Source: Auanema rhodensis (Eukaryota > Animalia > Nematoda). Taken from it: DNA of 64,000 nucleotides. The translations under genes were made by a program, and so were the position numbers. The notes below the pieces were generated by a model. That model saw only the letters and a list, made by a program, of their open reading frames with translations. It ran no database searches and was not told the origin of the DNA. Within the stretch, counting starts at the first letter, position 1. Each line of letters begins with the position of its first letter. Shown here piece by piece: positions 3,001-63,900 of this stretch. The DNA lies in contig CAXKVF010000073.1 in assembly GCA_964057225.1 (NCBI GenBank), positions 868,001 to 932,000 of the forward strand. The letters are read 5' to 3'.

Positions 3001-6000
3001 TTTCACGTGAAGCGAGTTACATACCAAGTGCACATCACGTGTACATTTAATTAGCATAAATTAAAGTTCACGTAAATTTCAAAGTCATGGTTACCATGCA
3101 CCAATATCGATAAAAATTTGTTTTTAGACTAATATGGACATGGGGAATCTAATTTTGAAAACCGCATCTCTTTATCTTTCACGTGAAGCGAGTTACATAC
3201 CAAGTGCACATCACGTGTACATTTAATCAGCATAAATTAAAGTTCACGTAAATTTCAAAGTCATGGTTACCATGAACCAATATCAATAAAAATTTGTTTT
3301 TAGACTAATATGGACATGGGGAATCTAATTTTGAAAACCGCATCTCTTTATCTTTCACGTGAAGCGAGTTACATACCAAGTGCACATCACGTGTACATTT
3401 AATTAGCATAAATTAAAGTTCACGTAAATTTCAAAGTCATGGTTACCATGAACCAATATCAATAAAAATTTGTTTTTAGACTAATATGGACATGGGGAAT
3501 CTAATTTTGAAAACCGCATCTCTTTATCTTTCACGTGAAGCGAGTTACATACCAAGTGCCCATCACGTGTACATTTAATTAGCATAAATTAAAGTTCACG
3601 TAAATTTCAAAGTCATGGTTACCATGCACCAATATCAATAAAAATTTGTTTTTAGACTAATATGGACATGGGGAATCTAATTTTGAAAACCGCATCTCGT
3701 TATCTTTCACGTGAAGCGAGTTACATACCAAGTGCACATCACGTGTACATTTAATTAGCATAAATTAAAGTTCACGTAAATTTCAAAGTCATGGTTACCA
3801 TGCACCAATATCAATAAAAATTTGTTTTTAGACTAATATGGACATGGGGAATCTAATTTTGAAAACCGCATCTCTTTATCTTTCACGTGAAGCGAGTTAC
3901 ATACCAAGTGCACATCACGTGTACATTTAATTAGCATAAATTAAAGTTCACGTAAGTTTCAAAGTCATGGTTACCATGCACCAATATCAATAAAAATTTG
4001 TTTTTAGACTAATATGGACATGGGGAATCTAATTTTGAAAACCGCATCTCTTTATCTTTCACGTGAAGCGAGTTACATACCAAGTGCACATCACGTGTAC
4101 ATTTAATTAGCATAAATTAAAGTTCACGTAAATTTCAAAGTCATGGTTACCATGAACCAATATCAATAAAAATTTGTTTTTAGACTAATATGGACATGGG
4201 GAATCTAATTTTGAAAACCGCATCTCTTTATCTTTCACGTGAAGCGAGTTACATACCAAGTGCACATCACGTGTACATTTAATTAGCATAAATTAAAGTT
4301 CACGTAAATTTCAAAGTCATGGTTACCATGCACCAATATCAATAAAAATTTGTTTTTAAACTAATATGGATATGGGGAATCTAATTTTGAAAACCGCATC
4401 TCTTTATCTTTCACGTGAAGCGAGTTACATACCAAGTGCACATCACGTGTACATTTAATTAGCATAAATTAAAGTTCACGTAAATTTCAAAGTCATGGTT
4501 ACCATGCACCAATATCGATAAAAATTTGTTTTTAGACTAATATGGACATGGGGAATCTAATTTTGAAAACCGCATCTCTTTATCTTTCACGTGAAGCGAG
4601 TTACATACCAAGTGCACATCACGTGTACATTTAATTAGCATAAATTAAAGTTCACGTAAATTTCAAAGTCATGGTTACCATGAACCAATATCAATAAAAA
4701 TTTGTTTTTAGACTAATATGGACATGGGGAATCTAATTTTGAAAACCGCATCTCTTTATCTTTCACGTGAAGCGAGTTACATACCAAGTGCACATCACGT
4801 GTACATTTAATTAGCATAAATTAAAGTTCACGTAAATTTCAAAGTCATGGTTACCATGAACCAATATCAATAAAAATTTGTTTTTAGACTAATATGGACA
4901 TGGGGAATCTAATTTTGAAAACCGCATCTCTTTATCTTTCACGTGAAGCGAGTTACCTACCAAGTGCCCATCACGTGTACATTTAATTAGCATAAATTAA
5001 AGTTCACGTAAATTTCAAAGTCATGGTTACCATGCACCAATATCAATAAAAATTTGTTTTTAGACTAATATGGACATGGGGAATCTAATTTTAAAAACCG
5101 CATCTCGTTATCTTTCACGTGAAGCGAGTTACATACCAAGTGCACATCACGTGTACATTTAATTAGCATAAATTAAAGTTCACGTAAATTTCAAAGTCAT
5201 GGTTACCATGCACCAATATCAATAAAAATTTGTTTTTAGACTAATATGGACATGGGGAATCTAATTTTGAAAACCGCATCTCTTTATCTTTCACGTGAAG
5301 CGAGTTACATACCAAGTGCACATCACGTGTACATTTAATTAGCATAAATTAAAGTTCACGTAAATTTCAAAGTCATGGTTACCATGCACCAATATCAATA
5401 AAAATTTGTTTTTAAACTAATATGGATATGGGGAATCTAATTTTGAAAACCGCATCTCTTTATCTTTCACGTGAAGCGAGTTACATACCAAGTGCACATC
5501 ACGTGTACATTTAATTAGCATAAATTAAAGTTCACGTAAATTTCAAAGTCATGGTTACCATGCACCAATATCGATAAAAATTTGTTTTTAGACTAATATG
5601 GACATGGGGAATCTAATTTTGAAAACCGCATCTCTTTATCTTTCACGTGAAGCGAGTTACATACCAAGTGCACATCACGTGTACATTTAATTAGCATAAA
5701 TTAAAGTTCACGTAAATTTCAAAGTCATGGTTACCATGAACCAATATCAATAAAAATTTGTTTTTAGACTAATATGGACATGGGGAATCTAATTTTGAAA
5801 ACCGCATCTCTTTATCTTTCACGTGAAGCGAGTTACCTACCAAGTGCCCATCACGTGTACATTTAATTAGCATAAATTAAAGTTCACGTAAATTTCAAAG
5901 TCATGGTTACCATGCACCAATATCAATAAAAATTTGTTTTTAGACTAATATGGACATGGGGAATCTAATTTTAAAAACCGCATCTCGTTATCTTTCACGT

Positions 6001-9000
6001 GAAGCGAGTTACATACCAAGTGCACATCACGTGTACATTTAATTAGCATAAATTAAAGTTCACGTAAATTTCAAAGTCATGGTTACCATGCACCAATATC
6101 AATAAAAATTTGTTTTTAGACTAATATGGACATGGGGAATCTAATTTTGAAAACCGCATCTCTTTATCTTTCACGTGAAGCGAGTTACATACCAAGTGCA
6201 CATCACGTGTACATTTAATTAGCATAAATTAAAGTTCACGTAAATTTCAAAGTCATGGTTACCATGCACCAATATCAATAAAAATTTGTTTTTAAACTAA
6301 TATGGATATGGGGAATCTAATTTTGAAAACCGCATCTCTTTATCTTTCACGTGAAGCGAGTTACATACCAAGTGCACATCACGTGTACATTTAATTAGCA
6401 TAAATTAAAGTTCACGTAAATTTCAAAGTCATGGTTACCATGCACCAATATCGATAAAAATTTGTTTTTAGACTAATATGGACATGGGGAATCTAATTTT
6501 GAAAACCGCATCTCTTTATCTTTCACGTGAAGCGAGTTACATACCAAGTGCACATCACGTGTACATTTAATTAGCATAAATTAAAGTTCACGTAAATTTC
6601 AAAGTCATGGTTACCATGAACCAATATCAATAAAAATTTGTTTTTAGACTAATATGGACATGGGGAATCTAATTTTGAAAACCGCATCTCTTTATCTTTC
6701 ACGTGAAGCGAGTTACATACCAAGTGCCCATCACGTGTACATTTAATTAGCATAAATTAAAGTTCACGTAAATTTCAAAGTCATGGTTACCATGCACCAA
6801 TATCAATAAAAATTTGTTTTTAGACTAATATGGACATGGGGAATCTAATTTTGAAAACCGCATCTCTTTATCTTTCACGTGAAGCGAGTTACATACCAAG
6901 TGCCCATCACGTGTACATTTAATTAGCATAAATTAAAGTTCACGTAAATTTTAAAGTCATGGTTACCATGCACCAATATCAATAAAAATTTGTTTTTAGA
7001 CTAATATGGACATGGGGAATCTAATTTTGAAAACCGCATCTCGTTATCTTTCACGTGAAGCGAGTTACATACCAAGTGCACATCACGTGTACATTTAATT
7101 AGCATAAATTAAAGTTCACGTAAATTTCAAAGTCATGGTTACCATGCACCAATATCAATAAAAATTTGTTTTTAGACTAATATGGACATGGGGAATCTAA
7201 TTTTGAAAACCGCATCTCTTTATCTTTCACGTGAAGCGAGTTACATACCAAGTGCACATCACGTGTACATTTAATTAGCATAAATTAAAGTTCACGTAAA
7301 TTTCAAAGTCATGGTTACCATGCACCAATATCAATAAAAATTTGTTTTTAAACTAATATGGATATGGGGAATCTAATTTTGAAAACCGCATCTCTTTATC
7401 TTTCACGTGAAGCGAGTTACATACCAAGTGCACATCACGTGTACATTTAATTAGCATAAATTAAAGTTCACGTAAATTTCAAAGTCATGGTTACCATGCA
7501 CCAATATCGATAAAAATTTGTTTTTAGACTAATATGGACATGGGGAATCTAATTTTGAAAACCGCATCTCTTTATCTTTCACGTGAAGCGAGTTACATAC
7601 CAAGTGCACATCACGTGTACATTTAATTAGCATAAATTAAAGTTCACGTAAATTTCAAAGTCATGGTTACCATGAACCAATATCAATAAAAATTTGTTTT
7701 TAGACTAATATGGACATGGGGAATCTAATTTTGAAAACCGCATCTCTTTATCTTTCACGTGAAGCGAGTTACATACCAAGTGCACATCACGTGTACATTT
7801 AATTAGCATAAATTAAAGTTCACGTAAATTTCAAAGTCATGGTTACCATGAACCAATATCGATAAAAATTTGTTTTTAGACTAATATGGACATGGGGAAT
7901 CTAATTTTGGAAACCGCATCTCTTTATCTTTCACGTGAAGCGAGTTACATACCAAGTGCACATCACGTGTACATTTAATTAGCATAAATTAAAGTTCACG
8001 TAAATTTCAAAGTCATGGTTACCATGAACCAATATCAATAAAAATTTGTTTTTAGACTAATATGGACATGGGGAATCTAATTTTGAAAACCGCATCTCTT
8101 TATCTTTCACGTGAAGCGAGTTACATACCAAGTGCACATCACGTGTACATTTAATTAGCATAAATTAAAGTTCACGTAAATTTCAAAGTCATGGTTACCA
8201 TGAACCAATATCAATAAAAATTTGTTTTTAGACTAATATGGACATGGGGAATCTAATTTTGAAAACCGCATCTCTTTATCTTTCACGTGAAGCGAGTTAC
8301 ATACCAAGTGCCCATCACGTGTACATTTAATTAGCATAAATTAAAGTTCACGTAAATTTCAAAGTCATGGTTACCATGCACCAATATCAATAAAAATTTG
8401 TTTTTAGACTAATATGGACATGGGGAATCTAATTTTGAAAACCGCATCTCTTTATCTTTCACGTGAAGCGAGTTACATACCAAGTGCCCATCACGTGTAC
8501 ATTTAATTAGCATAAATTAAAGTTCACGTAAATTTTAAAGTCATGGTTACCATGCACCAATATCAATAAAAATTTGTTTTTAGACTAATATGGACATGGG
8601 GAATCTAATTTTGAAAACCGCATCTCGTTATCTTTCACGTGAAGCGAGTTACATACCAAGTGCACATCACGTGTACATTTAATTAGCATAAATTAAAGTT
8701 CACGTAAATTTCAAAGTCATGGTTACCATGCACCAATATCAATAAAAATTTGTTTTTAGACTAATATGGACATGGGGAATCTAATTTTGAAAACCGCATC
8801 TCTTTATCTTTCACGTGAAGCGAGTTACATACCAAGTGCACATCACGTGTACATTTAATTAGCATAAATTAAAGTTCACGTAAATTTCAAAGTCATGGTT
8901 ACCATGCACCAATATCAATAAAAATTTGTTTTTAAACTAATATGGATATGGGGAATCTAATTTTGAAAACCGCATCTCTTTATCTTTCACGTGAAGCGAG

Positions 9001-30100: not shown

Positions 30101-33100
30101 TATCTTTCACGTGAAGCGAGTTACATACCAAGTGCACATCACGTGTACATTTAATTAGCATAAATTAAAGTTCACGTAAATTTCAAAGTCATGGTTACCA
30201 TGAACCAATATCAATAAAAATTTGTTTTTAGACTAATATGGACATGGGGAATCTAATTTTGAAAACCGCATCTCTTTATCTTTCACGTGAAGCGAGTTAC
30301 ATACCAAGTGCCCATCACGTGTACATTTAATTAGCATAAATTAAAGTTCACGTAAATTTCAAAGTCATGGTTACCATGCACCAATATCAATAAAAATTTG
30401 TTTTTAGACTAATATGGACATGGGGAATCTAATTTTGAAAACCGCATCTCGTTATCTTTCACGTGAAGCGAGTTACATACCAAGTGCACATCACGTGTAC
30501 ATTTAATTAGCATAAATTAAAGTTCACGTAAATTTCAAAGTCATGGTTACCATGCACCAATATCAATAAAAATTTGTTTTTAGACTAATATGGACATGGG
30601 GAATCTAATTTTGAAAACCGCATCTCTTTATCTTTCACGTGAAGCGAGTTACATACCAAGTGCCCATCACGTGTACATTTAATTAGCATAAATTAAATTT
30701 GTTTTTAGACTAATATGGACATGGGGAATCTAATTTTGAAAACCGCATCTCTTTATCTTTCACGTGAAGCGAGTTACATACCAAGTGCCCATCACGTGTA
30801 CATTTAATTAGCATAAATTAAAGTTCACGTAAATTTCAAAGTCATGGTTACCATGCACCAATATCAATAAAAATTTGTTTTTAAACTAATATGGATATGG
30901 GGAATCTAATTTTGAAAACCGCATCTCTTTATCTTTCACGTGAAGCGAGTTACATACCAAGTGCACATCACGTGTACATTTAATTAGCATAAATTAAAGT
31001 TCACGTAAATTTCAAAGTCATGGTTACCATGCACCAATATCGATAAAAATTTGTTTTTAGACTAATATGGACATGGGGAATCTAATTTTGAAAACCGCAT
31101 CTCTTTATCTTTCACGTGAAGCGAGTTACATACCAAGTGCACATCACGTGTACATTTAATTAGCATAAATTAAAGTTCACGTAAATTTCAAAGTCATGGT
31201 TACCATGAACCAATATCAATAAAAATTTGTTTTTAGACTAATATGGACATGGGGAATCTAATTTTGAAAACCGCATCTCTTTATCTTTCACGTGAAGCGA
31301 GTTACATACCAAGTGCACATCACGTGTACATTTAATTAGCATAAATTAAAGTTCACGTAAATTTCAAAGTCATGGTTACCATGAACCAATATCAATAAAA
31401 ATTTGTTTTTAGACTAATATGGACATGGGGAATCTAATTTTGAAAACCGCATCTCTTTATCTTTCACGTGAAGCGAGTTACATACCAAGTGCCCATCACG
31501 TGTACATTTAATTAGCATAAATTAAAGTTCACGTAAATTTCAAAGTCATGGTTACCATGCACCAATATCAATAAAAATTTGTTTTTAGACTAATATGGAC
31601 ATGGGGAATCTAATTTTGAAAACCGCATCTCGTTATCTTTCACGTGAAGCGAGTTACATACCAAGTGCACATCACGTGTACATTTAATTAGCATAAATTA
31701 AAGTTCACGTAAATTTCAAAGTCATGGTTACCATGCACCAATATCAATAAAAATTTGTTTTTAGACTAATATGGACATGGGGAATCTAATTTTGAAAACC
31801 GCATCTCTTTATCTTTCACGTGAAGCGAGTTACATACCAAGTGCACATCACGTGTACATTTAATTAGCATAAATTAAAGTTCACGTAAATTTCAAAGTCA
31901 TGGTTACCATGCACCAATATCAATAAAAATTTGTTTTTAGACTAATATGGACATGGGGAATCTAATTTTGGAAACCGCATCTCTTTATCTTTCACGTGAA
32001 GCGAGTTACATACCAAGTGCACATCACGTGTACATTTAATTAGCATAAATTAAAGTTCACGTAAATTTCAAAGTCATGGTTACCATGCACCAATATCAAT
32101 AAAAATTTGTTTTTAGACTAATATGGACATGGGGAATCTAATTTTGAAAACCGCATCTCTTTATCTTTCACGTGAAGCGAGTTACATACCATGTGCACAT
32201 CACGTGTACATTTAATTAGCATAAATTAAAGTTCACGTAAATTTCAAAGTCATGGTTACCATGAACCAATATCAATAAAAATTTGTTTTTAGACTAATAT
32301 GGACATGGGGAATCTAATTTTGAAAACCGCATCTCTTTATCTTTCACGTGAAGCGAGTTACATACCAAGTGCACATCACGTATACATTTAATTAGCATAA
32401 ATTAAAGTTCACGTAAATTTCAAAGTCATGGTTACCATGAACCAATATCAATAAAAATTTGTTTTTAGACTAATATGGACATGGGGAATCTAATTTTGAA
32501 AACCGCATCTCTTTATCTTTCACGTGAAGCGAGTTACATACCAAGTGCACATCACGTGTACATTTAATTAGCATAAATTAAAGTTCACGTAAATTTCAAA
32601 GTCATGGTTACCATGCACCAATATCAATGAAAATTTGTTTTTAGACTAATATGGACATGGGGAATCTAATTTTGAAAACCGCATCTCTTTATCTTTCACG
32701 TGAAGCGAGTTACATACCAAGTGCACATCACGTGTACATTTAATTAGCATAAATTAAAGTTCACGTAAATTTCAAAGTCATGGTTACCATGCACCAATAT
32801 CAATAAAAATTTGTTTTTAGACTAATATGGACATGGGGAATCTAATTTTGAAAACCGCATCTCTTTATCTTTCACGTGAAGCGAGTTACATACCAAGTGC
32901 ACATCACGTGTACATTTAATTAGCATAAATTAAAGTTCACGTAAATTTCAAAGTCATGGTTACCATGCACCAATATCAATACAAATTTGTTTTTAAACTA
33001 ATATGGACATGGGGAATCTAATTTTGAAAACCGCATCTCTTTATCTTTCACGTGAAGCGAGTTACATACCAAGTGCCCATCACGTGTACATTTAATTAGC

Positions 33101-45500: not shown

Positions 45501-48500
45501 GGACATGGGGAATCTAATTTTGAAAACCGCATCTCTTTATCTTTCACGTGAAGCGAGTTACATACCAAGTGCCCATCACGTGTACATTTAATTAGCATAA
45601 ATTAAAGTTCACGTAAATTTCAAAGTCATGGTTACCATGCACCAATATCAATAAAAATTTGTTTTTAGACTAATATGGACATGGGGAATCTAATTTTGAA
45701 AACCGCATCTCGTTATCTTTCACGTGAAGCGAGTTACATACCAAGTGCACATCACGTGTACATTTAATTAGCATAAATTAAAGTTCACGTAAATTTCAAA
45801 GTCATGGTTACCATGCACCAATATCAATAAAAATTTGTTTTTAGACTAATATGGACATGGGGAATCTAATTTTGAAAACCGCATCTCTTTATCTTTCACG
45901 TGAAGCGAGTTACATACCAAGTGCCCATCACGTGTACATTTAATTAGCATAAATTAAATTTGTTTTTAGACTAATATGGACATGGGGAATCTAATTTTGA
46001 AAACCGCATCTCTTTATCTTTCACGTGAAGCGAGTTACATACCAAGTGCCCATCACGTGTACATTTAATTAGCATAAATTAAAGTTCACGTAAATTTCAA
46101 AGTCATGGTTACCATGCACCAATATCAATAAAAATTTGTTTTTAAACTAATATGGATATGGGGAATCTAATTTTGAAAACCGCATCTCTTTATCTTTCAC
46201 GTGAAGCGAGTTACATACCAAGTGCACATCACGTGTACATTTAATTAGCATAAATTAAAGTTCACGTAAATTTCAAAGTCATGGTTACCATGCACCAATA
46301 TCGATAAAAATTTGTTTTTAGACTAATATGGACATGGGGAATCTAATTTTGAAAACCGCATCTCTTTATCTTTCACGTGAAGCGAGTTACATACCAAGTG
46401 CACATCACGTGTACATTTAATTAGCATAAATTAAAGTTCACGTAAATTTCAAAGTCATGGTTACCATGAACCAATATCAATAAAAATTTGTTTTTAGACT
46501 AATATGGACATGGGGAATCTAATTTTGAAAACCGCATCTCTTTATCTTTCACGTGAAGCGAGTTACATACCAAGTGCACATCACGTGTACATTTAATTAG
46601 CATAAATTAAAGTTCACGTAAATTTCAAAGTCATGGTTACCATGAACCAATATCAATAAAAATTTGTTTTTAGACTAATATGGACATGGGGAATCTAATT
46701 TTGAAAACCGCATCTCTTTATCTTTCACGTGAAGCGAGTTACATACCAAGTGCCCATCACGTGTACATTTAATTAGCATAAATTAAAGTTCACGTAAATT
46801 TCAAAGTCATGGTTACCATGCACCAATATCAATAAAAATTTGTTTTTAGACTAATATGGACATGGGGAATCTAATTTTGAAAACCGCATCTCGTTATCTT
46901 TCACGTGAAGCGAGTTACATACCAAGTGCACATCACGTGTACATTTAATTAGCATAAATTAAAGTTCACGTAAATTTCAAAGTCATGGTTACCATGCACC
47001 AATATCAATAAAAATTTGTTTTTAGACTAATATGGACATGGGGAATCTAATTTTGAAAACCGCATCTCTTTATCTTTCACGTGAAGCGAGTTACATACCA
47101 AGTGCACATCACGTGTACATTTAATTAGCATAAATTAAAGTTCACGTAAATTTCAAAGTCATGGTTACCATGCACCAATATCAATAAAAATTTGTTTTTA
47201 GACTAATATGGACATGGGGAATCTAATTTTGGAAACCGCATCTCTTTATCTTTCACGTGAAGCGAGTTACATACCAAGTGCACATCACGTGTACATTTAA
47301 TTAGCATAAATTAAAGTTCACGTAAATTTCAAAGTCATGGTTACCATGCACCAATATCAATAAAAATTTGTTTTTAGACTAATATGGACATGGGGAATCT
47401 AATTTTGAAAACCGCATCTCTTTATCTTTCACGTGAAGCGAGTTACATACCAAGTGCACATCACGTGTACATTTAATTAGCATAAATTAAAGTTCACGTA
47501 AATTTCAAAGTCATGGTTACCATGAACCAATATCAATAAAAATTTGTTTTTAGACTAATATGGACATGGGGAATCTAATTTTGAAAACCGCATCTCTTTA
47601 TCTTTCACGTGAAGCGAGTTACATACCAAGTGCACATCACGTATACATTTAATTAGCATAAATTAAAGTTCACGTAAATTTCAAAGTCATGGTTACCATG
47701 AACCAATATCAATAAAAATTTGTTTTTAGACTAATATGGACATGGGGAATCTAATTTTGAAAACCGCATCTCTTTATCTTTCACGTGAAGCGAGTTACAT
47801 ACCAAGTGCACATCACGTGTACATTTAATTAGCATAAATTAAAGTTCACGTAAATTTCAAAGTCATGGTTACCATGCACCAATATCAATGAAAATTTGTT
47901 TTTAGACTAATATGGACATGGGGAATCTAATTTTGAAAACCGCATCTCTTTATCTTTCACGTGAAGCGAGTTACATACCAAGTGCACATCACGTGTACAT
48001 TTAATTAGCATAAATTAAAGTTCACGTAAATTTCAAAGTCATGGTTACCATGCACCAATATCAATACAAATTTGTTTTTAAACTAATATGGACATGGGGA
48101 ATCTAATTTTGAAAACCGCATCTCTTTATCTTTCACGTGAAGCGAGTTACATACCAAGTGCCCATCACGTGTACATTTAATTAGCATAAATTAAAGTTCA
48201 CGTAAATTTCAAAATCATGGTTACCATGCACCAATATCAATAAAAATTTGTTTTTAAACTAATATGGATATGGGGAATCTAATTTTGAAAACCGCATCTC
48301 TTTATCTTTCACGTGAAGCGAGTTACATACCAAGTGCACATCACGTGTACATTTAATTAGCATAAATTAAAGTTCACGTAAATTTCAAAGTCATGGTTAC
48401 CATGCACCAATATCGATAAAAATTTGTTTTTAGACTAATATGGACATGGGGAATCTAATTTTGAAAACCGCATCTCTTTATCTTTCACGTGAAGCGAGTT

Positions 48501-56800: not shown

Positions 56801-59800
56801 TAATTAGCATAAATTAAAGTTCACGTAAATTTCAAAGTCATGGTTACCATGCACCAATATCGATAAAAATTTGTTTTTAGACTAATATGGACATGGGGAA
56901 TCTAATTTTGAAAACCGCATCTCTTTATCTTTCACGTGAAGCGAGTTACATACCAAGTGCACATCACGTGTACATTTAATTAGCATAAATTAAAGTTCAC
57001 GTAAATTTCAAAGTCATGGTTACCATGAACCAATATCAATAAAAATTTGTTTTTAGACTAATATGGACATGGGGAATCTAATTTTGAAAACCGCATCTCT
57101 TTATCTTTCACATGAAGCGAGTTACATACCAAGTGCACATCACGTGTACATTTAATTAGCATAAATTAAAGTTCACGTAAATTTCAAAGTCATGGTTACC
57201 ATGAACCAATATCAATAAAAATTTGTTTTTAGACTAATATGGACATGGGGAATCTAATTTTGAAAACCGCATCTCTTTATCTTTCACGTGAAGCGAGTTA
57301 CATACCAAGTGCCCATCACGTGTACATTTAATTAGCATAAATTAAAGTTCACGTAAATTTCAAAGTCATGGTTACCATGCACCAATATCAATAAAAATTT
57401 GTTTTTAGACTAATATGGACATGGGGAATCTAATTTTGAAAACCGCATCTCGTTATCTTTCACGTGAAGCGAGTTACATACCAAGTGCACATCACGTGTA
57501 CATTTAATTAGCATAAATTAAAGTTCACGTAAATTTCAAAGTCATGGTTACCATGAACCAATATCAATAAAAATTTGTTTTTAAACTAATATGGATATGG
57601 GGAATCTAATTTTGAAAACCGCATCTCTTTATCTTTCACGTGAAGCGAGTTACATACCAAGTGCACATCACGTGTACATTTAATTAGCATAAATTAAAGT
57701 TCACGTAAATTTCAAAGTCATGGTTACCATGCACCAATATCGATAAAAATTTGTTTTTAGACTAATATGGACATGGGGAATCTAATTTTGAAAACCGCAT
57801 CTCTTTATCTTTCACGTGAAGCGAGTTACATACCAAGTGCACATCACGTGTACATTTAATTAGCATAAATTAAAGTTCACGTAAATTTCAAAGTCATGGT
57901 TACCATGAACCAATATCAATAAAAATTTGTTTTTAGACTAATATGGACATGGGGAATCTAATTTTGAAAACCGCATCTCTTTATCTTTCACGTGAAGCGA
58001 GTTACATACCAAGTGCACATCACGTGTACATTTAATTAGCATAAATTAAAGTTCACGTAAATTTCAAAGTCATGGTTACCATGAACCAATATCAATAAAA
58101 ATTTGTTTTTAGACTAATATGGACATGGGGAATCTAATTTTGAAAACCGCATCTCTTTATCTTTCACGTGAAGCGAGTTACATACCAAGTGCACATCACG
58201 TGTACATTTAATTAGCATAAATTAAAGTTCACGTAAATTTCAAAGTCATGGTTACCATGAACCAATATCAATTAAAATTTGTTTTTAGACTAATATGGAC
58301 ATGGGGAATCTAATTTTGAAAACCGCATCTCTTCATCTTTCACGTGAAGCGAGTTACATACCAAGTGCACATCACGTGTACATTTAATTAGCATAAATTA
58401 AAGTTCACGTAAATTTCAAAGTCATGGTTACCATGAACCAATATCAATAAAAATTTGTTTTTAGACTAATATGGACATGGGGAATCTAATTTTGAAAACC
58501 GCATCTCTTTATCTTTCACGTGAAGCGAGTTACGTACCAAGTGCACATCACGTGTACATTTAATTAGCATAAATTAAAGTTCACGTAAATTTCAAAGTCA
58601 TGGTTACCATGCACCAATATCAATAAAAATTTGTTTTTAAACTAATATGGATATGGGGAATCTAATTTTGAAAACCGCATCTCTTCATCTTTCACGTGAA
58701 GCGAGTTACATACCAAGTGCCCATCACGTGTACATTTAATTAGCATAAATTAAAGTTCACGTAAATTTCAAAGTCATGGTTACCATGCACCAATATCAAT
58801 AAAAATTTGTTTTTAGACTAATATGGACATGGGGAATCTAATTTTGAAAACCGCATCTCTTTATCTTTCACGTGAAGCGAGTTACATACCAAGTGCACAT
58901 CACGTGTACATTTAATTAGCATAAATTAAAGTTCACGTAAATTTCAAAGTCATGGTTACCATGAACCAATATCAATAAAAATTTGTTTTTAGACTAATAT
59001 GGACATGGGGAATCTAATTTTGAAAACCGCATCTCTTCATCTTTCACGTGAAGCGAGTTACATACCAAGTGCACATCACGTGTACATTTAATTAGCATAA
59101 ATTAAAGTTCACGTAAATTTCAAAGTCATGGTTACCATGAACCAATATCAATAAAAATTTGTTTTTAGACTAATATGGACATGGGGAATCTAATTTTGAA
59201 AACCGCATCTCTTTATCTTTCACGTGAAGCGAGTTACATACCAAGTGCACATCACGTGTACATTTAATTAGCATAAATTAAAGTTCACGTAAATTTCAAA
59301 GTCATGGTTACCATGAACCAATATCAATAAAAATTTGTTTTTAGACTAATATGGACATGGGGAATCTAATTTTGAAAACCGCATCTCTTTATCTTTCACG
59401 TGAAGCGAGTTACATACCAAGTGCACATCACGTGTACATTTAATTAGCATAAATTAAAGTTCACGTAAATTTCAAAGTCATGGTTACCATGAACCAATAT
59501 CAATAAAAATTTGTTTTTAGACTAATATGGACATGGGGAATCTAATTTTGAAAACCGCATCTCTTTATCTTTCACGTGAAGCGAGTTACATACCAAGTGC
59601 CCATCACGTGTACATTTAATTAGCATAAATTAAAGTTCACGTAAATTTCAAAGTCATGGTTACCATGCACCAATATCAATAAAAATTTGTTTTTAGACTA
59701 ATATGGACATGGGGAATCTAATTTTGAAAACCGCATCTCGTTATCTTTCACGTGAAGCGAGTTACATACCAAGTGCACATCACGTGTACATTTAATTAGC

Positions 59801-59957
59801 ATAAATTAAAGTTCACGTAAATTTCAAAGTCATGGTTACCATGAACCAATATCAATAAAAATTTGTTTTTAAACTAATATGGATATGGGGAATCTAATTT
59901 TGAAAACCGCATCTCTTTATCTTTCACGTGAAGCGAGTTACATACCAAGTGCACATC

Positions 59958-59963
59958 ACGTGT
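59958..59963 (+). repeat. Apparent target-site duplication, left copy (ACGTGT)
   Basis: Left junction CACATC-ACGTGT|TCAACC. An uninterrupted monomer has ACGTGT once at this site. Exact length (3-6 bp) is ambiguous because of junction microhomology. Confidence 0.75.
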
Positions 59964-60433
59964 TCAACCTTTTTTGCAGCTACGTTCGACCAATCCTTGA
60001 ATATGCATCCGTGATATGGTCTCCCCAAGTATCTAAAAAAATATCTCGTATTGAGATGGTCCAAAAAAAATTCTTGCGAGCAGTCTTTTCAAGAGCAGGA
60101 ATTTTTTCCGACTACAAAAGTCAGCTCACTTTTTTGAATGCTCAAGAACTATCAACCAGGAGACAGGTAACTGATCTAGGTTTCTATTTCTCTCAAATTA
60201 AAGACGTATCAACGGACAGTATTTTAAGAATTTTTCAAATTAAACATTTCACCCACTCTCTTCGCAGACACCAATGGAATATCGACTATCCCGAGCTTCG
60301 GAAAAAGGCGACAAGAAATGGTATTGAGTACAGAAGCATCAAAACATGGAACGATCTACCTGAAAACCTTATCAACCTTACTAATGTTCATAATTTTAAA
60401 AAACACCTACTCTCTGCTCCAATTGATTTGTAA
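59963..60433 (+). pseudogene. C-terminal ~156-codon fragment of CR1-type LINE ORF2 (RT thumb/C-terminal region; endonuclease and RT catalytic core absent)
   Basis: Open frame FNLFCSYVRPILEY...APIDL* ending in TAA at 60431-60433 with no stops or frameshifts. The 28 aa upstream in the ORF track (59879-59962) are satellite-derived. Confidence 0.9.
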
Positions 60434-60921
60434 ACCATTCATTGTAATTAATGTTCTCACCTCTCGAAAAACTATTTTTTTTTCTTTTATCAGGCTCCTT
60501 TTTATTTGTAGTTCGTATTTTTTCACACTTCTCTATGACCACATGGCAACAGTCTACCATCTATTTTTCTTTGTCCCTTCTCAATAATTGTTACTTCGTC
60601 ACTATTCCTATAGACATTAGTCATACGGATCGGACGCTAGTTACCTCCAAATTGCTAGAACGGGCTTGCCTCACATCACGAGTACCACCGTACCTAACAA
60701 CCACATTAGTGAGGTCAGCCATTGTGCTGAACAAACCCCAAGCATACAGCAAGAATTTTATTTGGCAGACTGTTCACTATTGATCATGGATAAGCGAGCT
60801 CTTATCGAACTTACAATATTAAAAGTCCTTTTTTATGTTCTTATTGAATGGTTCTTGATTTTTTCACTCCATGACTTAACAGCTACTGTCTTAACCTGTG
60901 ATATTGAACAATAAACAATAA
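59964..60921 (+). mobile_element. 5'-truncated non-LTR retrotransposon (LINE), CR1 clade (CR1/L2 group), ~958 bp
   Basis: Unique sequence interrupting a monomer. It encodes YVRPILEYASVIWSP...IEMVQKKFLR...Y..QL..LN...LSTRR...DL...R.H...R...WNDLP......FKKHL, the characteristic post-RT C-terminal motif series of CR1-clade ORF2 (VRPxLEY-WSP, LExVQRR, LxxRR, TRGH, WNxLP, FKxxL). It ends in a short tandem-repeat tail rather than poly(A) and is flanked by an ACGTGT direct repeat. Confidence 0.92.
60434..60921 (+). other. LINE 3' UTR (~490 bp): T-rich proximal part, hairpin-rich distal part
   Basis: Lies between the ORF2 stop and the tail. T9 run at 60475-60483. Inverted repeats: CCTCAC/GTGAGG (60669-60714), TCAGC/GCTGA (60715-60730), GATAAG/CTTATC (60789-60806), ACAG-CTA-CTGT (60879-60889). 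Confidence 0.8.
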
Positions 60922-60923
60922 AC
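60907..60923 (+). repeat. 3'-terminal microsatellite tail (AACAATA)2AAC of the LINE, containing two AATAAA hexamers
   Basis: AACAATA AACAATA AAC read directly. The last AC is shared with the target sequence ACGTGT. Short tandem-repeat tails are typical of CR1/L2 elements. Confidence 0.85.
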
Positions 60924-60927
60924 GTGT
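60922..60927 (+). repeat. Apparent target-site duplication, right copy (ACGTGT)
   Basis: Right junction ACAATAA|ACGTGT-ACATTTAATT. Confidence 0.75.
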
Positions 60928-63900
60928 ACATTTAATTAGCATAAATTAAAGTTCATGTAAATTTCAAAGTCATGGTTACCATGCACCAATATCAATAAAA
61001 ATTTGTTTTTAGACTAATATGGACATGGGGAATCTAATTTTGAAAACCGCATCTCTTCATCTTTCACGTGAAGCGAGTTACATACCAAGTGCACATCACG
61101 TGTACATTTAATTAGCATAAATTAAAGTTCACGTAAATTTCAAAGTCATGGTTACCATGAACCAATATCAATAAAAATTTGTTTTTCGACTAATATGGAC
61201 ATGGGGAATCTAATTTTGAAAACCGCATCTCTTTATCTTTCACGTGAAGCGAGTTACATACCAAGTGCACATCACGTGTACATTTAATTAGCATAAATTA
61301 AAGTTCACGTAAATTTCAAAGTCATGGTTACCATGCACCAATATCAATAAAAATTTGTTTTTAAACTAATATGGACATGGGGAATCTAATTTTGAAAACC
61401 GCATCTCTTTATCTTTCACGTGAAGCGAGTTACATACCAAGTGCACATCACGTGTACATTTAATTAGCATAAATTAAAGTTCACGTAACTTTCAAAGTCA
61501 TGGTTACCATGCACCAATATCAATAAAAATTTGTTTTTAGACTAATATGGACATGGGGAATCTAATTTTGAAAACCGCATCTCTTTATCTTTCACGTGAA
61601 GCGAGCTACATACTAAGTGCACATCACGTGTACATTTAATTAGCATAAATTAAAGTTCACGTAAATTTCAAAGTCATGGTTACCATGAACCAATATCAAT
61701 AAAAATTTGTTTTTAGACTAATATGGACATGGGGAATCTAATTTTGAAAACCGCATCTCTTTATCTTTCACGTGAAGCGAGTTACATACCAAGTGCACAT
61801 CACGTGTACATTTAATTAGCATAAATTAAAGTTCACGTAAATTTCAAAGTCATGGTTACCATGCACCAATATCAATACAAATTTGTTTTTAAACTAATAT
61901 GGACATGAGGAATCTAATTTTGAAAACCGCATCTCTTTATCTTTCACGTGAAGCGAGTTACATACCAAGTGCACATCACGTGTACATTTAATTAGCATAA
62001 ATTAAAGTTCACGTAAATTTCAAAGTCATGGTTACCATGCACCAATATCGATAAAAATTTGTTTTTAGACTAATATGGACATGGGGAATCTAATTTTGAA
62101 AACCGCATCTCTTTATCTTTCACGTGAAGCGAGTTACATACCAAGTGCACATCACGTGTACATTTAATTAGCATAAATTAAAGTTCACGTAAATTTCAAA
62201 GTCATGGTTACCATGAACCAATATCAATAAAAATTTGTTTTTAAACTAATATGGACATGGGGAATCTAATTTTGAAAACCGCATCTCTTTATCTTTCACG
62301 TGAAGCGAGTTACATACCAAGTGCCCATCACGTGTACATTTAATTAGCATAAATTAAAGTTCACGTAAATTTCAAAGTCATGGTTACCATGCACCAATAT
62401 CAATAAAAATTTGTTTTTAGACTAATATGGACATGGGGAATCTTATTTTGAAAACCGCATCTCGTTATCTTTCACGTGAAGCGAGTTACATACCAAGTGC
62501 ACATCACGTGTACATTTAATTAGCATAAATTAAAGTTCACGTAAATTTCAAAGTCATGGTTACCATGCACCAATATCAATAAAAATTTGTTTTTAGACTA
62601 ATATGGACATGGGGGAATCTAATTTTGAAAACCGCATCTCTTTATCTTTCACGTGAAGCGAGTTACATACCAAGTGCACATCACGTGTACATTTAATTAG
62701 CATAAATTAAAGTTCACGTAAATTTCAAAGTCATGGTTACCATGCACCAATATCAATAAAAATTTGTTTTTAGACTAATATGGACATGGGGAATCTAATT
62801 TTGGAAACCGCATCTCTTTATCTTTCACGTGAAGCGAGTTACATACCAAGTGCACATCACGTGTACATTTAATTAGCATAAATTAAAGTTCACGTAAATT
62901 TCAAAGTCATGGTTACCATGCACCAATATCAATAAAAATTTGTTTTTAGACTAATATGGACATGGGGAATCTAATTTTGAAAACCGCATCTCTTTATCTT
63001 TCACGTGAAGCGAGTTACATACCAAGTGCACATCACGTGTACATTTAATTAGCATAAATTAAAGTTCACGTAAATTTCAAAGTCATGGTTACCATGCACC
63101 AATATCAATAAAAATTTGTTTTTAGACTAATATGGACATGGGGAATCTAATTTTGAAAACCGCATCTCTTTATCTTTCACGTGAAGCGAGTTACATACCA
63201 AGTGCACATCACGTGTACATTTAATTAGCATAAATTAAAGTTCACGTAAATTTCAAAGTCATGGTTACCATGAACCAATATCAATAAAAATTTGTTTTTC
63301 GACTAATATGGACATGGGGAATCTAATTTTGAAAACCGCATCTCTTTATCTTTCACGTGAAGCGAGTTACATACCAAGTGCACATCACGTGTACATTTAA
63401 TTAGCATAAATTAAAGTTCACGTAAATTTCAAAGTCATGGTTACCATGCACCAATATCAATAAAAATTTGTTTTTAAACTAATATGGACATGGGGAATCT
63501 AATTTTGAAAACCGCATCTCTTTATCTTTCACGTGAAGCGAGTTACATACCAAGTGCACATCACGTGTACATTTAATTAGCATAAATTAAAGTTCACGTA
63601 ACTTTCAAAGTCATGGTTACCATGCACCAATATCAATAAAAATTTGTTTTTAGACTAATATGGACATGGGGAATCTAATTTTGAAAACCGCATCTCTTTA
63701 TCTTTCACGTGAAGCGAGCTACATACTAAGTGCACATCACGTGTACATTTAATTAGCATAAATTAAAGTTCACGTAAATTTCAAAGTCATGGTTACCATG
63801 AACCAATATCAATAAAAATTTGTTTTTAGACTAATATGGACATGGGGAATCTAATTTTGAAAACCGCATCTCTTTATCTTTCACGTGAAGCGAGTTACAT

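What the first reader, a model, noticed from the sequence alone, without database searches (positions are those of the whole stretch)
60672..60685. The LINE 3' UTR carries a near-perfect copy of its own insertion site: candidate RNA-guided or satellite-targeting retrotransposon
Seen: the 3' UTR contains CACATCACGAGTAC, a 13/14 match to the satellite sequence CACATCACGTGTAC. That is precisely the site the element interrupts (left junction 59952-59963, right junction 60922-60929), in the same orientation. Established: in target-primed reverse transcription the bottom strand is nicked and primes on the element RNA. Inference: a sense-orientation copy in the RNA could pair with that bottom strand, and the inferred nick (CACATC^ACGTGTAC, +/-2 nt) would sit near the middle of the duplex. 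The motif also begins in the 5' arm of a predicted CCTCAC/GTGAGG stem and runs into its loop. Rough hand estimate assuming uniform base composition: 43/4^14 x ~960 positions x ~10 windows x 2 strands gives ~0.003 for a match over the insertion site, or ~0.05 for a match anywhere in the monomer. This is suggestive but post hoc and from one copy. I know of no CR1-clade element with an internal UTR guide segment; known site-specific LINEs (R1, R2, SART/TRAS, Tx1) rely on protein recognition plus terminal read-through homology. Alternatives are a shared protein-binding motif on element and satellite, common ancestry of motif and satellite, or chance.
Basis: partly seen in the sequence, partly recalled or inferred. 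Interest (0 to 1): 0.8.

Follow-up and report, generated by a model that had tools for sequence, protein, structure and literature searches.

The report
Target look-alike in a jumping gene's tail
A roundworm jumping gene that always lands at one exact letter of a 176-letter repeat does carry a near-copy of that landing site in its tail, but the near-copy is the tip of a conserved RNA hairpin and sister families that lack it land at the same letter, so it is very unlikely to steer insertion.

Summary
CACATCACGAGTAC at 60672-60685 matches the satellite site CACATCACGTGTAC at 13 of 14 positions, in the same orientation. It lies in the 3' UTR of a 958-bp 5'-truncated LINE (59964-60921) flanked by an ACGTGT target-site duplication.

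Site-specific insertion is strongly supported. I read about 60 copies from at least nine families or variants (about 67-99% identical to the window copy where alignable). Of roughly 44 events, 37 end at the same nucleotide (...AA|ACGTGTACATTT), and family-A copies have six different 5' ends.

The guide reading is not supported:
- The 14-mer is the apical hairpin (CUC/GAG stem, 7-nt loop) of a long conserved 3'-UTR hairpin with compensatory changes.
- The loop is the most variable part of that block.
- Families with 12, 11, 10, 9 and about 7 matches out of 14 hit the same nucleotide. Family G has an unrelated 6-nt loop.
- The on-target fraction does not follow the match (Fisher p = 0.68).
- The mismatched A is nearly invariant.
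- In shuffles, 13/14 occurs anywhere in 6-12%, and across the site on the same strand in 0.2-0.35%.

Full-length copies and duplicated tails carry flanking satellite bases. This fits the known mode: protein recognition plus terminal read-through homology.

The scan noted this idea (s1-421325) and this lineage (s1-393647) earlier on other DNA.

The parts
59958..59963 (+). Left copy of the target-site duplication ACGTGT; the satellite ends here.
   Evidence: The same 6 bases recur at 60922-60927.
59964..60921 (+). 5'-truncated copy (958 bp) of a roughly 5-kb APE-type LINE, family A.
   Evidence: 99% identical over its full length to 11 other loci. The full-length copy is L031 3569-8554, with ORF1 of 346 aa and ORF2 of 1027 aa carrying Exo_endo_phos and RVT_1 domains.
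59966..60433 (+). Remnant of the ORF2 C-terminus (155 codons plus stop).
   Evidence: It is identical in frame to the end of the L031 ORF2.
60434..60921 (+). 3' UTR (488 bp).
60606..60629 (+). Conserved small hairpin (helix 1) upstream of the long hairpin.
   Evidence: Alignment A1 columns 5-28: 100% paired in 10 sequences and mostly invariant.
60644..60714 (+). Long conserved 3'-UTR hairpin (helices 3-5) enclosing the 14-mer.
   Evidence: RNAalifold plus pair counts: 96% of cells paired against 28-37% when partners are slid, and 5 pairs with compensatory changes. Families C, D, E and G fold to the same architecture on their own.
60670..60682 (+). Apical hairpin: CUC/GAG stem (60670-60672 with 60680-60682) and 7-nt loop ACAUCAC (60673-60679).
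   Evidence: A1 columns 69-81. The stem is invariant and 5 of 7 loop columns vary among families.
60672..60685 (+). The reported 14-mer, 13/14 identical to the satellite insertion site.
60906..60921 (+). A-rich 3' tail with no poly(A), ending in AA directly before the target ACGTGT.
   Evidence: Other family-A copies differ here by one base, and some have the tail unit duplicated.
60922..60927 (+). Right copy of the target-site duplication ACGTGT; the satellite resumes.

Best explanation
The insert is a 5'-truncated copy of an APE-endonuclease LINE. It belongs to a multi-family lineage that integrates at one nucleotide of the 176-bp satellite (CACATC|ACGTGT).

The 14-mer is not a guide. It is the tip of a long conserved 3'-UTR hairpin: the last stem pair, the 7-nt loop, the 3' stem arm and three following bases. 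That hairpin is most likely the structure the element's reverse transcriptase recognises on its own RNA. The resemblance of the family-A loop to the target is coincidental, or at most an ancestral remnant that is not needed.

Targeting most likely comes from sequence-specific nicking or binding by the ORF2 protein at the CACGTG-containing site. Annealing of read-through satellite sequence at the RNA 3' end to the nicked bottom strand probably helps. Variable top-strand cleavage then gives 2-6 bp duplications, and the 5' end is joined by microhomology or by upstream read-through sequence.

Shown here: the common junction, the conserved structure, loop variability with an unchanged target, and target-derived bases at element ends.

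Inferred: endonuclease specificity and RT-hairpin recognition.
For: 1. Same 3' junction (...AA|ACGTGTACATTT) in families A, B, C1, C2, D, E, F1, F2 and G. The junction pattern occurs 52 times in the genome.

2. Family-A events are independent. The 5' ends differ: the window and L017, L031, L032, and L082 and L083.

3. The motif varies while the target stays the same:
- A: CACATCACGAGTAC, 13/14
- B: CAGATCAC.., 12/14
- C1: CAAATCAT.., 11/14
- E: CACATCAAGAGTTC, 11/14
- C2: CGAATCAT.., 10/14
- D: CAACTTAT.., 9/14
- F1 and F2: CATGTCAA.. and CAAGTCAA.., 9/14
- G: a 6-nt loop TCTTTT, about 7/14
Families F (7 of 7 counted events; three further F1b-variant copies are also on target) and G (3 copies, at least 2 events) are all on target.

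4. On/off-target events by family: A 9/1, B 4/0, E 6/0, C1 1/2, C2 5/0, D 3/4, F1 5/0, F2 2/0. There is no association with the match (Fisher p = 0.68; Spearman rho = -0.15).

5. Structure: 36 consensus pairs, 96% of cells paired against 28-37% when slid, and 14 cells with a change on both sides against 4.0 in shuffles (0 of 500 shuffles reach this). By eye, family G's MFE fold pairs ACUAC with GUAGU where the other families pair ACCUC with GAGGU.

6. Variable columns: loop 5 of 7, paired columns 9 of 36, core 32 of 76.

7. Terminal homology:
- The full-length L031 starts with 21 nt that copy the satellite just upstream of the site.
- L082 starts with CAC.
- The tails of L004/L005, L024 and L026 contain duplicated target bases (ACGTGT, ACGT, ACGTGTAC).

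8. For R2, the 3' UTR is recognised through its structure, the DNA target is read by the protein, and flanking homology at the RNA ends aids integration (PMC12203849).
Against: - The site-spanning 13/14 match is uncommon in shuffles (0.16-0.35%).
- Families A and E, from different branches, share the loop start ACATCA. The ancestor may therefore have matched the target at 11-13 of 14 positions, which leaves room for an ancestral or accessory role.
- The family with the lowest 7-nt-loop match, D, also has the most off-target insertions (4 of 7 events).
- Neither endonuclease specificity nor RT binding to the hairpin was tested here.
- The LINE clade was not established.
Confidence: 0.8

Rival explanations
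1. Accessory or ancestral RNA tether. The exposed apical loop (ACAUCAC in family A) pairs with the bottom strand across the nick. This improves docking or efficiency in families A, B and E. It has decayed in families C, D, F and G, which rely on protein recognition alone.
For: - The site-spanning 13/14 match occurs in only 0.16-0.35% of shuffles.
- The matching bases lie largely in an unpaired loop.
- Families A and E share ACATCA.
- The worst-matching 7-nt-loop family, D, has 4 of 7 events off target.
Against: - Families F (9/14) and G (unrelated 6-nt loop) are fully on target at the same nucleotide.
- There is no association between match and on-target fraction.
- The loop is the least constrained part of the block although the target is constant.
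- The stem base that mismatches the target is nearly invariant.
- A parsimony reading by hand of the ancestor guarantees only 11/14, and shuffles reach that across the site 18% of the time.
Confidence: 0.07
2. Shared protein-binding motif. The same ORF2 (or ORF1) surface reads CACATCACG both in the RNA hairpin and in the satellite DNA, which explains the resemblance.
For: The motif sits in the most conserved UTR block, which is plausibly protein-bound. The target is constant across families.
Against: The bases that resemble the target are the variable ones. The invariant bases (CUC...GAGU.CC.CCG) do not resemble the site beyond chance. Family G lacks the loop motif and still hits the site.
Confidence: 0.05
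3. Common ancestry or capture. The loop segment was copied from the satellite, for example by template switching onto read-through satellite RNA, or the satellite derives from a LINE UTR.
For: Read-through satellite sequence is demonstrably carried on element ends, so the raw material for capture exists.
Against: Similarity stops exactly at the 14-mer. No other window reaches 13/14, and the remaining 12/14 windows are T/A-rich low-complexity sequence. The segment is an integral, length-conserved part of a hairpin shared by all families, which leaves no sign of an insertion.
Confidence: 0.04

Closest known systems
Site-specific APE-type LINEs of the R1 clade (R1, TRAS, SART) and the Tx1 clade (Keno, Kibi, Koshi, Mutsu)
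   Same: Both have an APE endonuclease plus RT. Both insert at one nucleotide of a multicopy tandem target. Both carry target-derived sequence at the element ends, show 5' truncation, and have short or variable target-site duplications. Reported target-specific APE LINEs belong to these two clades (PMC4640811).
   Different: The target is a 176-bp satellite, not an RNA gene, a telomeric repeat or a microsatellite. ORF1 has no CCHC knuckles and ORF2 has no C-terminal CCHC. From my own knowledge, those knuckles mark the R1 and Tx1 clades respectively. Clade membership was not tested by phylogeny.
R2 (rDNA-specific, restriction-like endonuclease)
   Same: A structured 3' UTR is recognised by shape. 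The protein reads the DNA target. Flanking homology at the RNA ends helps integration, and the element is co-transcribed with its host repeat (PMC12203849).
   Different: R2 has a different endonuclease type (RLE against APE here), a single ORF and an HDV-like ribozyme. Only the RT cores are similar (E = 1.8e-11 to R2Bm).
CR1/L2-type 'stringent' LINEs with a conserved 3'-UTR stem-loop and a short-repeat tail
   Same: There is no poly(A), the 3' end is a short repeat unit that stutters, a conserved 3'-UTR hairpin is present, and ORF1 is a coiled coil without zinc knuckles. The comparison with CR1/L2 rests on my own knowledge.
   Different: CR1/L2 elements are generally dispersed, whereas this lineage is nucleotide-specific. 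RT phylogeny was not done here.
Group II intron retrohoming (EBS/IBS pairing), the known case of an internal RNA segment choosing the DNA site of a retroelement
   Different: Here the candidate segment is not conserved among relatives that share the target. There is no evidence that it contributes to site choice.

Membership tests
Site-specific non-LTR retrotransposon (APE type) | ORF2 with an apurinic-like endonuclease and a reverse transcriptase | tested here: met
   Pfam hits: RVT_1 at 3.1e-32, Exo_endo_phos at 2.2e-08 and Exo_endo_phos_2 at 2.6e-08 on the 1027-aa ORF2 of L031.
Site-specific non-LTR retrotransposon (APE type) | Independent insertions share the same target nucleotide and orientation | tested here: met
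   The same 3' junction is found in nine families or variants. There are six different 5' ends in family A. About 37 of roughly 44 counted events are on target.
Site-specific non-LTR retrotransposon (APE type) | Hallmarks of target-primed reverse transcription: 5' truncation and a target-site duplication | tested here: met
   The window copy is truncated at 958 bp with an ACGTGT duplication. Other copies have duplications of 2-5 bp.
   Matches of 13, 12, 11, 10, 9 and about 7 of 14 all go with the identical target. 5 of 7 loop columns vary.
   Every family found uses the same site. The genome has no relatives in the searchable collections.
   The on-target fraction against the match gives Fisher p = 0.68 and Spearman rho = -0.15.
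CR1 clade | The RT groups with CR1-clade references in a phylogeny | not tested
   No named reference set was available. The nearest database proteins are unnamed and at most 30% identical.
CR1 clade | No poly(A); the 3' end is a short repeat unit; a conserved 3'-UTR structure is present | tested here: met
   Tails are described (a (CAAA)n tail in family G). These features are consistent with the clade but do not define it.
R1 and Tx1 clades (the known APE site-specific clades) | CCHC zinc knuckles (ORF1 in R1; ORF2 C-terminus in Tx1), as I recall them | tested here: not met
   No C-x2-C-x4-H-x4-C pattern occurs in ORF1 or ORF2. ORF1 has 5 Cys in total.

The most novel reading that the evidence does not exclude
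The apical loop of the conserved 3'-UTR hairpin was ancestrally complementary to the bottom strand across the nick. In families A, B and E it still acts as an accessory RNA tether that raises the efficiency or precision of target-primed reverse transcription. This would be a first internal RNA-DNA docking element in a LINE, dispensable in families that lost it.
Probability: 0.06. Interest if true: 0.8.

Novelty: new member of a known kind. Interest (0 to 1): 0.35.

Why it matters
An internal RNA guide would have been a new principle for LINE targeting and a route to programmable insertion. The family comparison argues against it.

What remains is still useful. This is a rich natural series of at least nine diverged LINE families locked onto one nucleotide of a satellite. 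They share a covarying 3'-UTR hairpin and show visible read-through homology at both ends.

That makes a good system for three questions: how an APE-type LINE outside the classic R1 and Tx1 clades achieves nucleotide precision, which RNA structure its RT recognises, and how elements persist inside satellite arrays.

Tried and rejected
- Rfam scan of 59900-61000 at E <= 1 found nothing.
- I searched for a second landing site at the other CACGTG of the monomer with a tail-plus-site pattern. The 26 hits were satellite variants, not LINE junctions.
- I searched for short copies joined to the satellite through the motif, as expected if cDNA of the 14-mer annealed to the target. There were no hits with up to 1 mismatch.
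- Pfam on ORF1 and on the ORF2 segments outside APE and RT gave nothing above noise, so no DNA-binding domain was identified.
- The PDB sequence search matched only the RT cores of L1 ORF2p and R2, which says nothing about the clade.
- Literature searches found no description of this element or of an internal LINE guide. This is a limited open-access library.
Smaller requests were accepted, so 5' ends were read only for families A and F1.
I reran it with a monomer consensus computed from the window.
- No consensus of the element was built.
- The species, and the earlier notes' claim that this satellite is eliminated from somatic cells, were not checked.

Full report
**What is in the window**

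The whole 64-kb window is one array of a 176-bp satellite, about 363 copies at 92% matches. It is interrupted once.

Reading 59400-61500 shows the satellite ending ...CACATCACGTGT at 59963. A 958-bp foreign segment follows at 59964-60921, and the satellite resumes with ACGTGTACATTT at 60922. ACGTGT is therefore duplicated (59958-59963 and 60922-60927).

The insert carries the last 155 codons of an ORF (59966-60433). A 488-bp 3' UTR follows, ending in an A-rich tail without poly(A).

The reported 14-mer CACATCACGAGTAC is at 60672-60685. It differs from the satellite site CACATCACGTGTAC at one base.

**How unusual the match is**

I used dinucleotide-preserving shuffles against a monomer consensus computed from the window.

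| Test | Result |
|---|---|
| 13/14 anywhere, either strand, 958-bp insert | 12.4% of shuffles |
| 13/14 anywhere, either strand, UTR alone | 5.7% |
| 13/14 spanning the junction, same strand | 0.30-0.35% |
| 13/14 spanning the junction, same strand (5000 shuffles) | 0.16% |
| At least 12/14 across the site | 2.0% |
| At least 11/14 across the site | 18% |

The match is modestly unusual at the site, unremarkable elsewhere, and was chosen after looking.

**The element and its site specificity**

A search of the window's own genome (180.9 Mb in 112 contigs) found more than 40 related copies.

A full-length family-A copy lies in L031 at about 3569-8554, between satellite arrays. It has these parts:
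- a 5' region with an 18-bp unit repeated 21 times;
- ORF1 of 346 aa, with a coiled-coil-like N-terminus, no Pfam domain and no CCHC knuckle;
- ORF2 of 1027 aa with an APE-type endonuclease and a reverse transcriptase, and no RNase H or CCHC.

The nearest proteins in the large database are unnamed and at most 30% identical.

Nearly every copy ends in ...AA followed by ACGTGTACATTT of the satellite. That junction pattern occurs 52 times in the genome.

Family-A insertions are independent events because their 5' ends differ:
- the window copy is truncated at 958 bp;
- L017-L020 are truncated at 469 bp;
- L032 is truncated about 2.1 kb into the element;
- L031, L082 and L083 are full-length, with 21, 5 and many repeat units and different joints.

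Target-site duplications range from AC to ACGTGT.

The element is a satellite-targeting, nucleotide-specific LINE. Earlier notes of this scan reached the same conclusion on other DNA (s1-393647, s1-418267).

**The test of the guide idea: relatives with the same target**

A pattern anchored on the invariant bases around the motif found 53 copies. Junction-anchored fetches added more. The families are about 67-99% identical to the window copy where alignable.

| Family | Motif at the 14-mer position | Match to site |
|---|---|---|
| A | CACATCACGAGTAC | 13/14 |
| B | CAGATCACGAGTAC | 12/14 |
| C1 | CAAATCATGAGTAC | 11/14 |
| E | CACATCAAGAGTTC | 11/14 |
| C2 | CGAATCATGAGTAC | 10/14 |
| D | CAACTTATGAGTAC | 9/14 |
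| F1 | CATGTCAAGAGTTC | 9/14 |
| F2 | CAAGTCAAGAGTTC | 9/14 |
| G | 6-nt loop TCTTTT in place of the 7-nt loop | about 7/14 |

A variant, F1b, has GGG for GAG.

All of these families insert at the same nucleotide. I treated obvious tandem or segmental duplicates as one event.

| Family | On target | Off target |
|---|---|---|
| A | 9 | 1 |
| B | 4 | 0 |
| E | 6 | 0 |
| C1 | 1 | 2 |
| C2 | 5 | 0 |
| D | 3 | 4 |
| F1 | 5 | 0 |
| F2 | 2 | 0 |
| G | 3 copies, at least 2 events | 0 |

Families with at least 11/14 give 20 on and 3 off. Families with 10/14 or fewer give 15 on and 4 off. Fisher p is 0.68 and Spearman rho is -0.15.

A family with an unrelated loop (G) and two with 9/14 (F1, F2) are as precise as family A. 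The match is therefore not needed for site choice.

No copy is joined to the satellite through the motif. Such copies might be expected if the motif or its cDNA annealed to the target during integration.

**What the 14-mer is**

The motif lies in the best-conserved block of the UTR.

RNAalifold on ten sequences from eight families and variants gives a small upstream hairpin and a long four-helix hairpin. The long hairpin spans alignment columns 43-113, which is window 60644-60714.

Its apex is a CUC/GAG stem with a 7-nt loop. The stem is window 60670-60672 with 60680-60682, and the loop is 60673-60679.

Pair counts support the structure:
- 96% of cells are paired, against 28-37% when partners are slid by 1-3 columns;
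- five pairs show changes on both sides;
- 14 cells show a change on both sides, against 4.0 expected, with 0 of 500 shuffles as high.

Families C, D, E and G fold to the same architecture on their own. By eye in that fold, family G pairs ACUAC with GUAGU where the others pair ACCUC with GAGGU.

The 14-mer is thus the last stem pair, the whole loop, the 3' stem arm and three bases of the next internal loop.

The loop is the least constrained part of the block. Five of 7 loop columns vary, against 9 of 36 paired columns and 32 of 76 core columns. The base that mismatches the target (A at 60681) is in the stem and is nearly invariant. This is the opposite of what a guide facing a constant target should show.

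Across families it pairs in only 62% of cells, with no covariation.

Rfam has no matching family.

**What most likely does the targeting**

Two observations show that element RNAs carry flanking satellite sequence.
- The full-length copy L031 begins with 21 nt that repeat the satellite immediately upstream of the site, and L082 begins with its last three bases.
- Several tails contain duplicated target bases between repeated tail units: ACGTGT in L004/L005, ACGT in L024 and ACGTGTAC in L026.

This is the terminal read-through homology known from other site-specific LINEs. For R2, a review states three relevant points (PMC12203849):
- the 3' UTR is recognised through its structure;
- the protein reads the DNA motifs;
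- homology to the flanks at the RNA ends aids integration.

By inference, the ORF2 endonuclease nicks the bottom strand opposite CACATC|ACGTGT. The hairpin recruits the RT, and read-through ACGUGU... anneals to the primer.

One off-target family-D insertion sits next to ACGTGTAAATT. This fits recognition of, or annealing to, those few bases.

Endonuclease specificity and RT binding to the hairpin were not tested.

**What keeps a small door open**

Families A and E sit on different branches and share the loop start ACATCA. A parsimony reading by hand puts the ancestral 14-mer at 11-13 matches. Family D, the poorest match among the 7-nt-loop families, has the most off-target events.

An ancestral or accessory docking role cannot be excluded. 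I put it at about 6%.

A shared protein-binding motif is unlikely because the target-like bases are the variable ones. Capture from the satellite is unlikely because the similarity stops at the 14-mer and the hairpin length is conserved.

**Comparison with known systems**

Reported target-specific APE LINEs belong to the R1 and Tx1 clades (PMC4640811). This element lacks the CCHC knuckles that I recall as typical of those clades. It has a non-poly(A) stuttering tail and a conserved 3' hairpin, as in CR1/L2-type elements. No RT phylogeny was possible, so the clade is open.

I file it as a new member of the known kind "site-specific LINE", with a satellite as its target. It is not an RNA-guided element.

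**Limits**

- The census is a sample, because pattern and BLAST searches score only the best candidates.
- No sister genome was available.
- I did not check the earlier notes' statement that the satellite is eliminated from somatic cells.

Noticed in passing
L031:3587-3966; L082 and L083 (family-A 5' ends): Full-length copies begin with an 18-bp unit (TTCCGCGCCGTGACCTCA) repeated 21, 5 or many times. L083 has a run of a 21-nt variant unit instead. The copy number differs between insertions.
   Followed up: partly
L087, L090, L092 (G000:C7 about 480-631 kb): A very short E/F-type insertion has its 5' end made of about 10 reiterations of a roughly 20-nt unit from the element's own 3' end. It is joined at ...CACATCACGTG and amplified many times together with the satellite.
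   Followed up: partly
L078:1700-1760 (G000:C1 about 327.2 kb): The 5' junction of an F1 copy lies directly after ...ATCTTTC, at the other CACGTG of the monomer, while its 3' junction is at the usual site. This implies loss of about 32 bp of target between two TC|ACGTG positions.
   Followed up: no
L006, L008-L010 (G000:C3:10703953-10714935): Four family-A 3' portions lie outside the satellite, spaced 3260-3505 bp apart with identical flanks (ACTATGAACC...). This looks like a tandemly amplified off-target insertion.
   Followed up: no
L004/L005 (G000:C6:21562516-21571414): Two family-A copies lie head to head about 8 kb apart and share the same unusual duplicated tail. This is probably an inverted duplication and not two separate events.
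   Followed up: no
window 30570-30822 and 45831-46083: Two identical period-125 irregularities (100% match, 2 copies each) lie 15,261 bp apart in the array. This suggests a large duplication of roughly 15 kb within the satellite.
   Followed up: no
L040-L064 (G000:C80:316923-409766): A satellite variant reads ...ATCTTAAACGTGAAG in place of ...ATCTTTCACGTGAAG. It recurs 25 times at multiples of 176 bp, marking a local subfamily or higher-order repeat.
   Followed up: partly
window, about every 8th monomer (e.g. 1975, 2503, 2855): A minority monomer type has CCCATCACGTGTAC instead of CACATCACGTGTAC at the insertion site.
   Followed up: no
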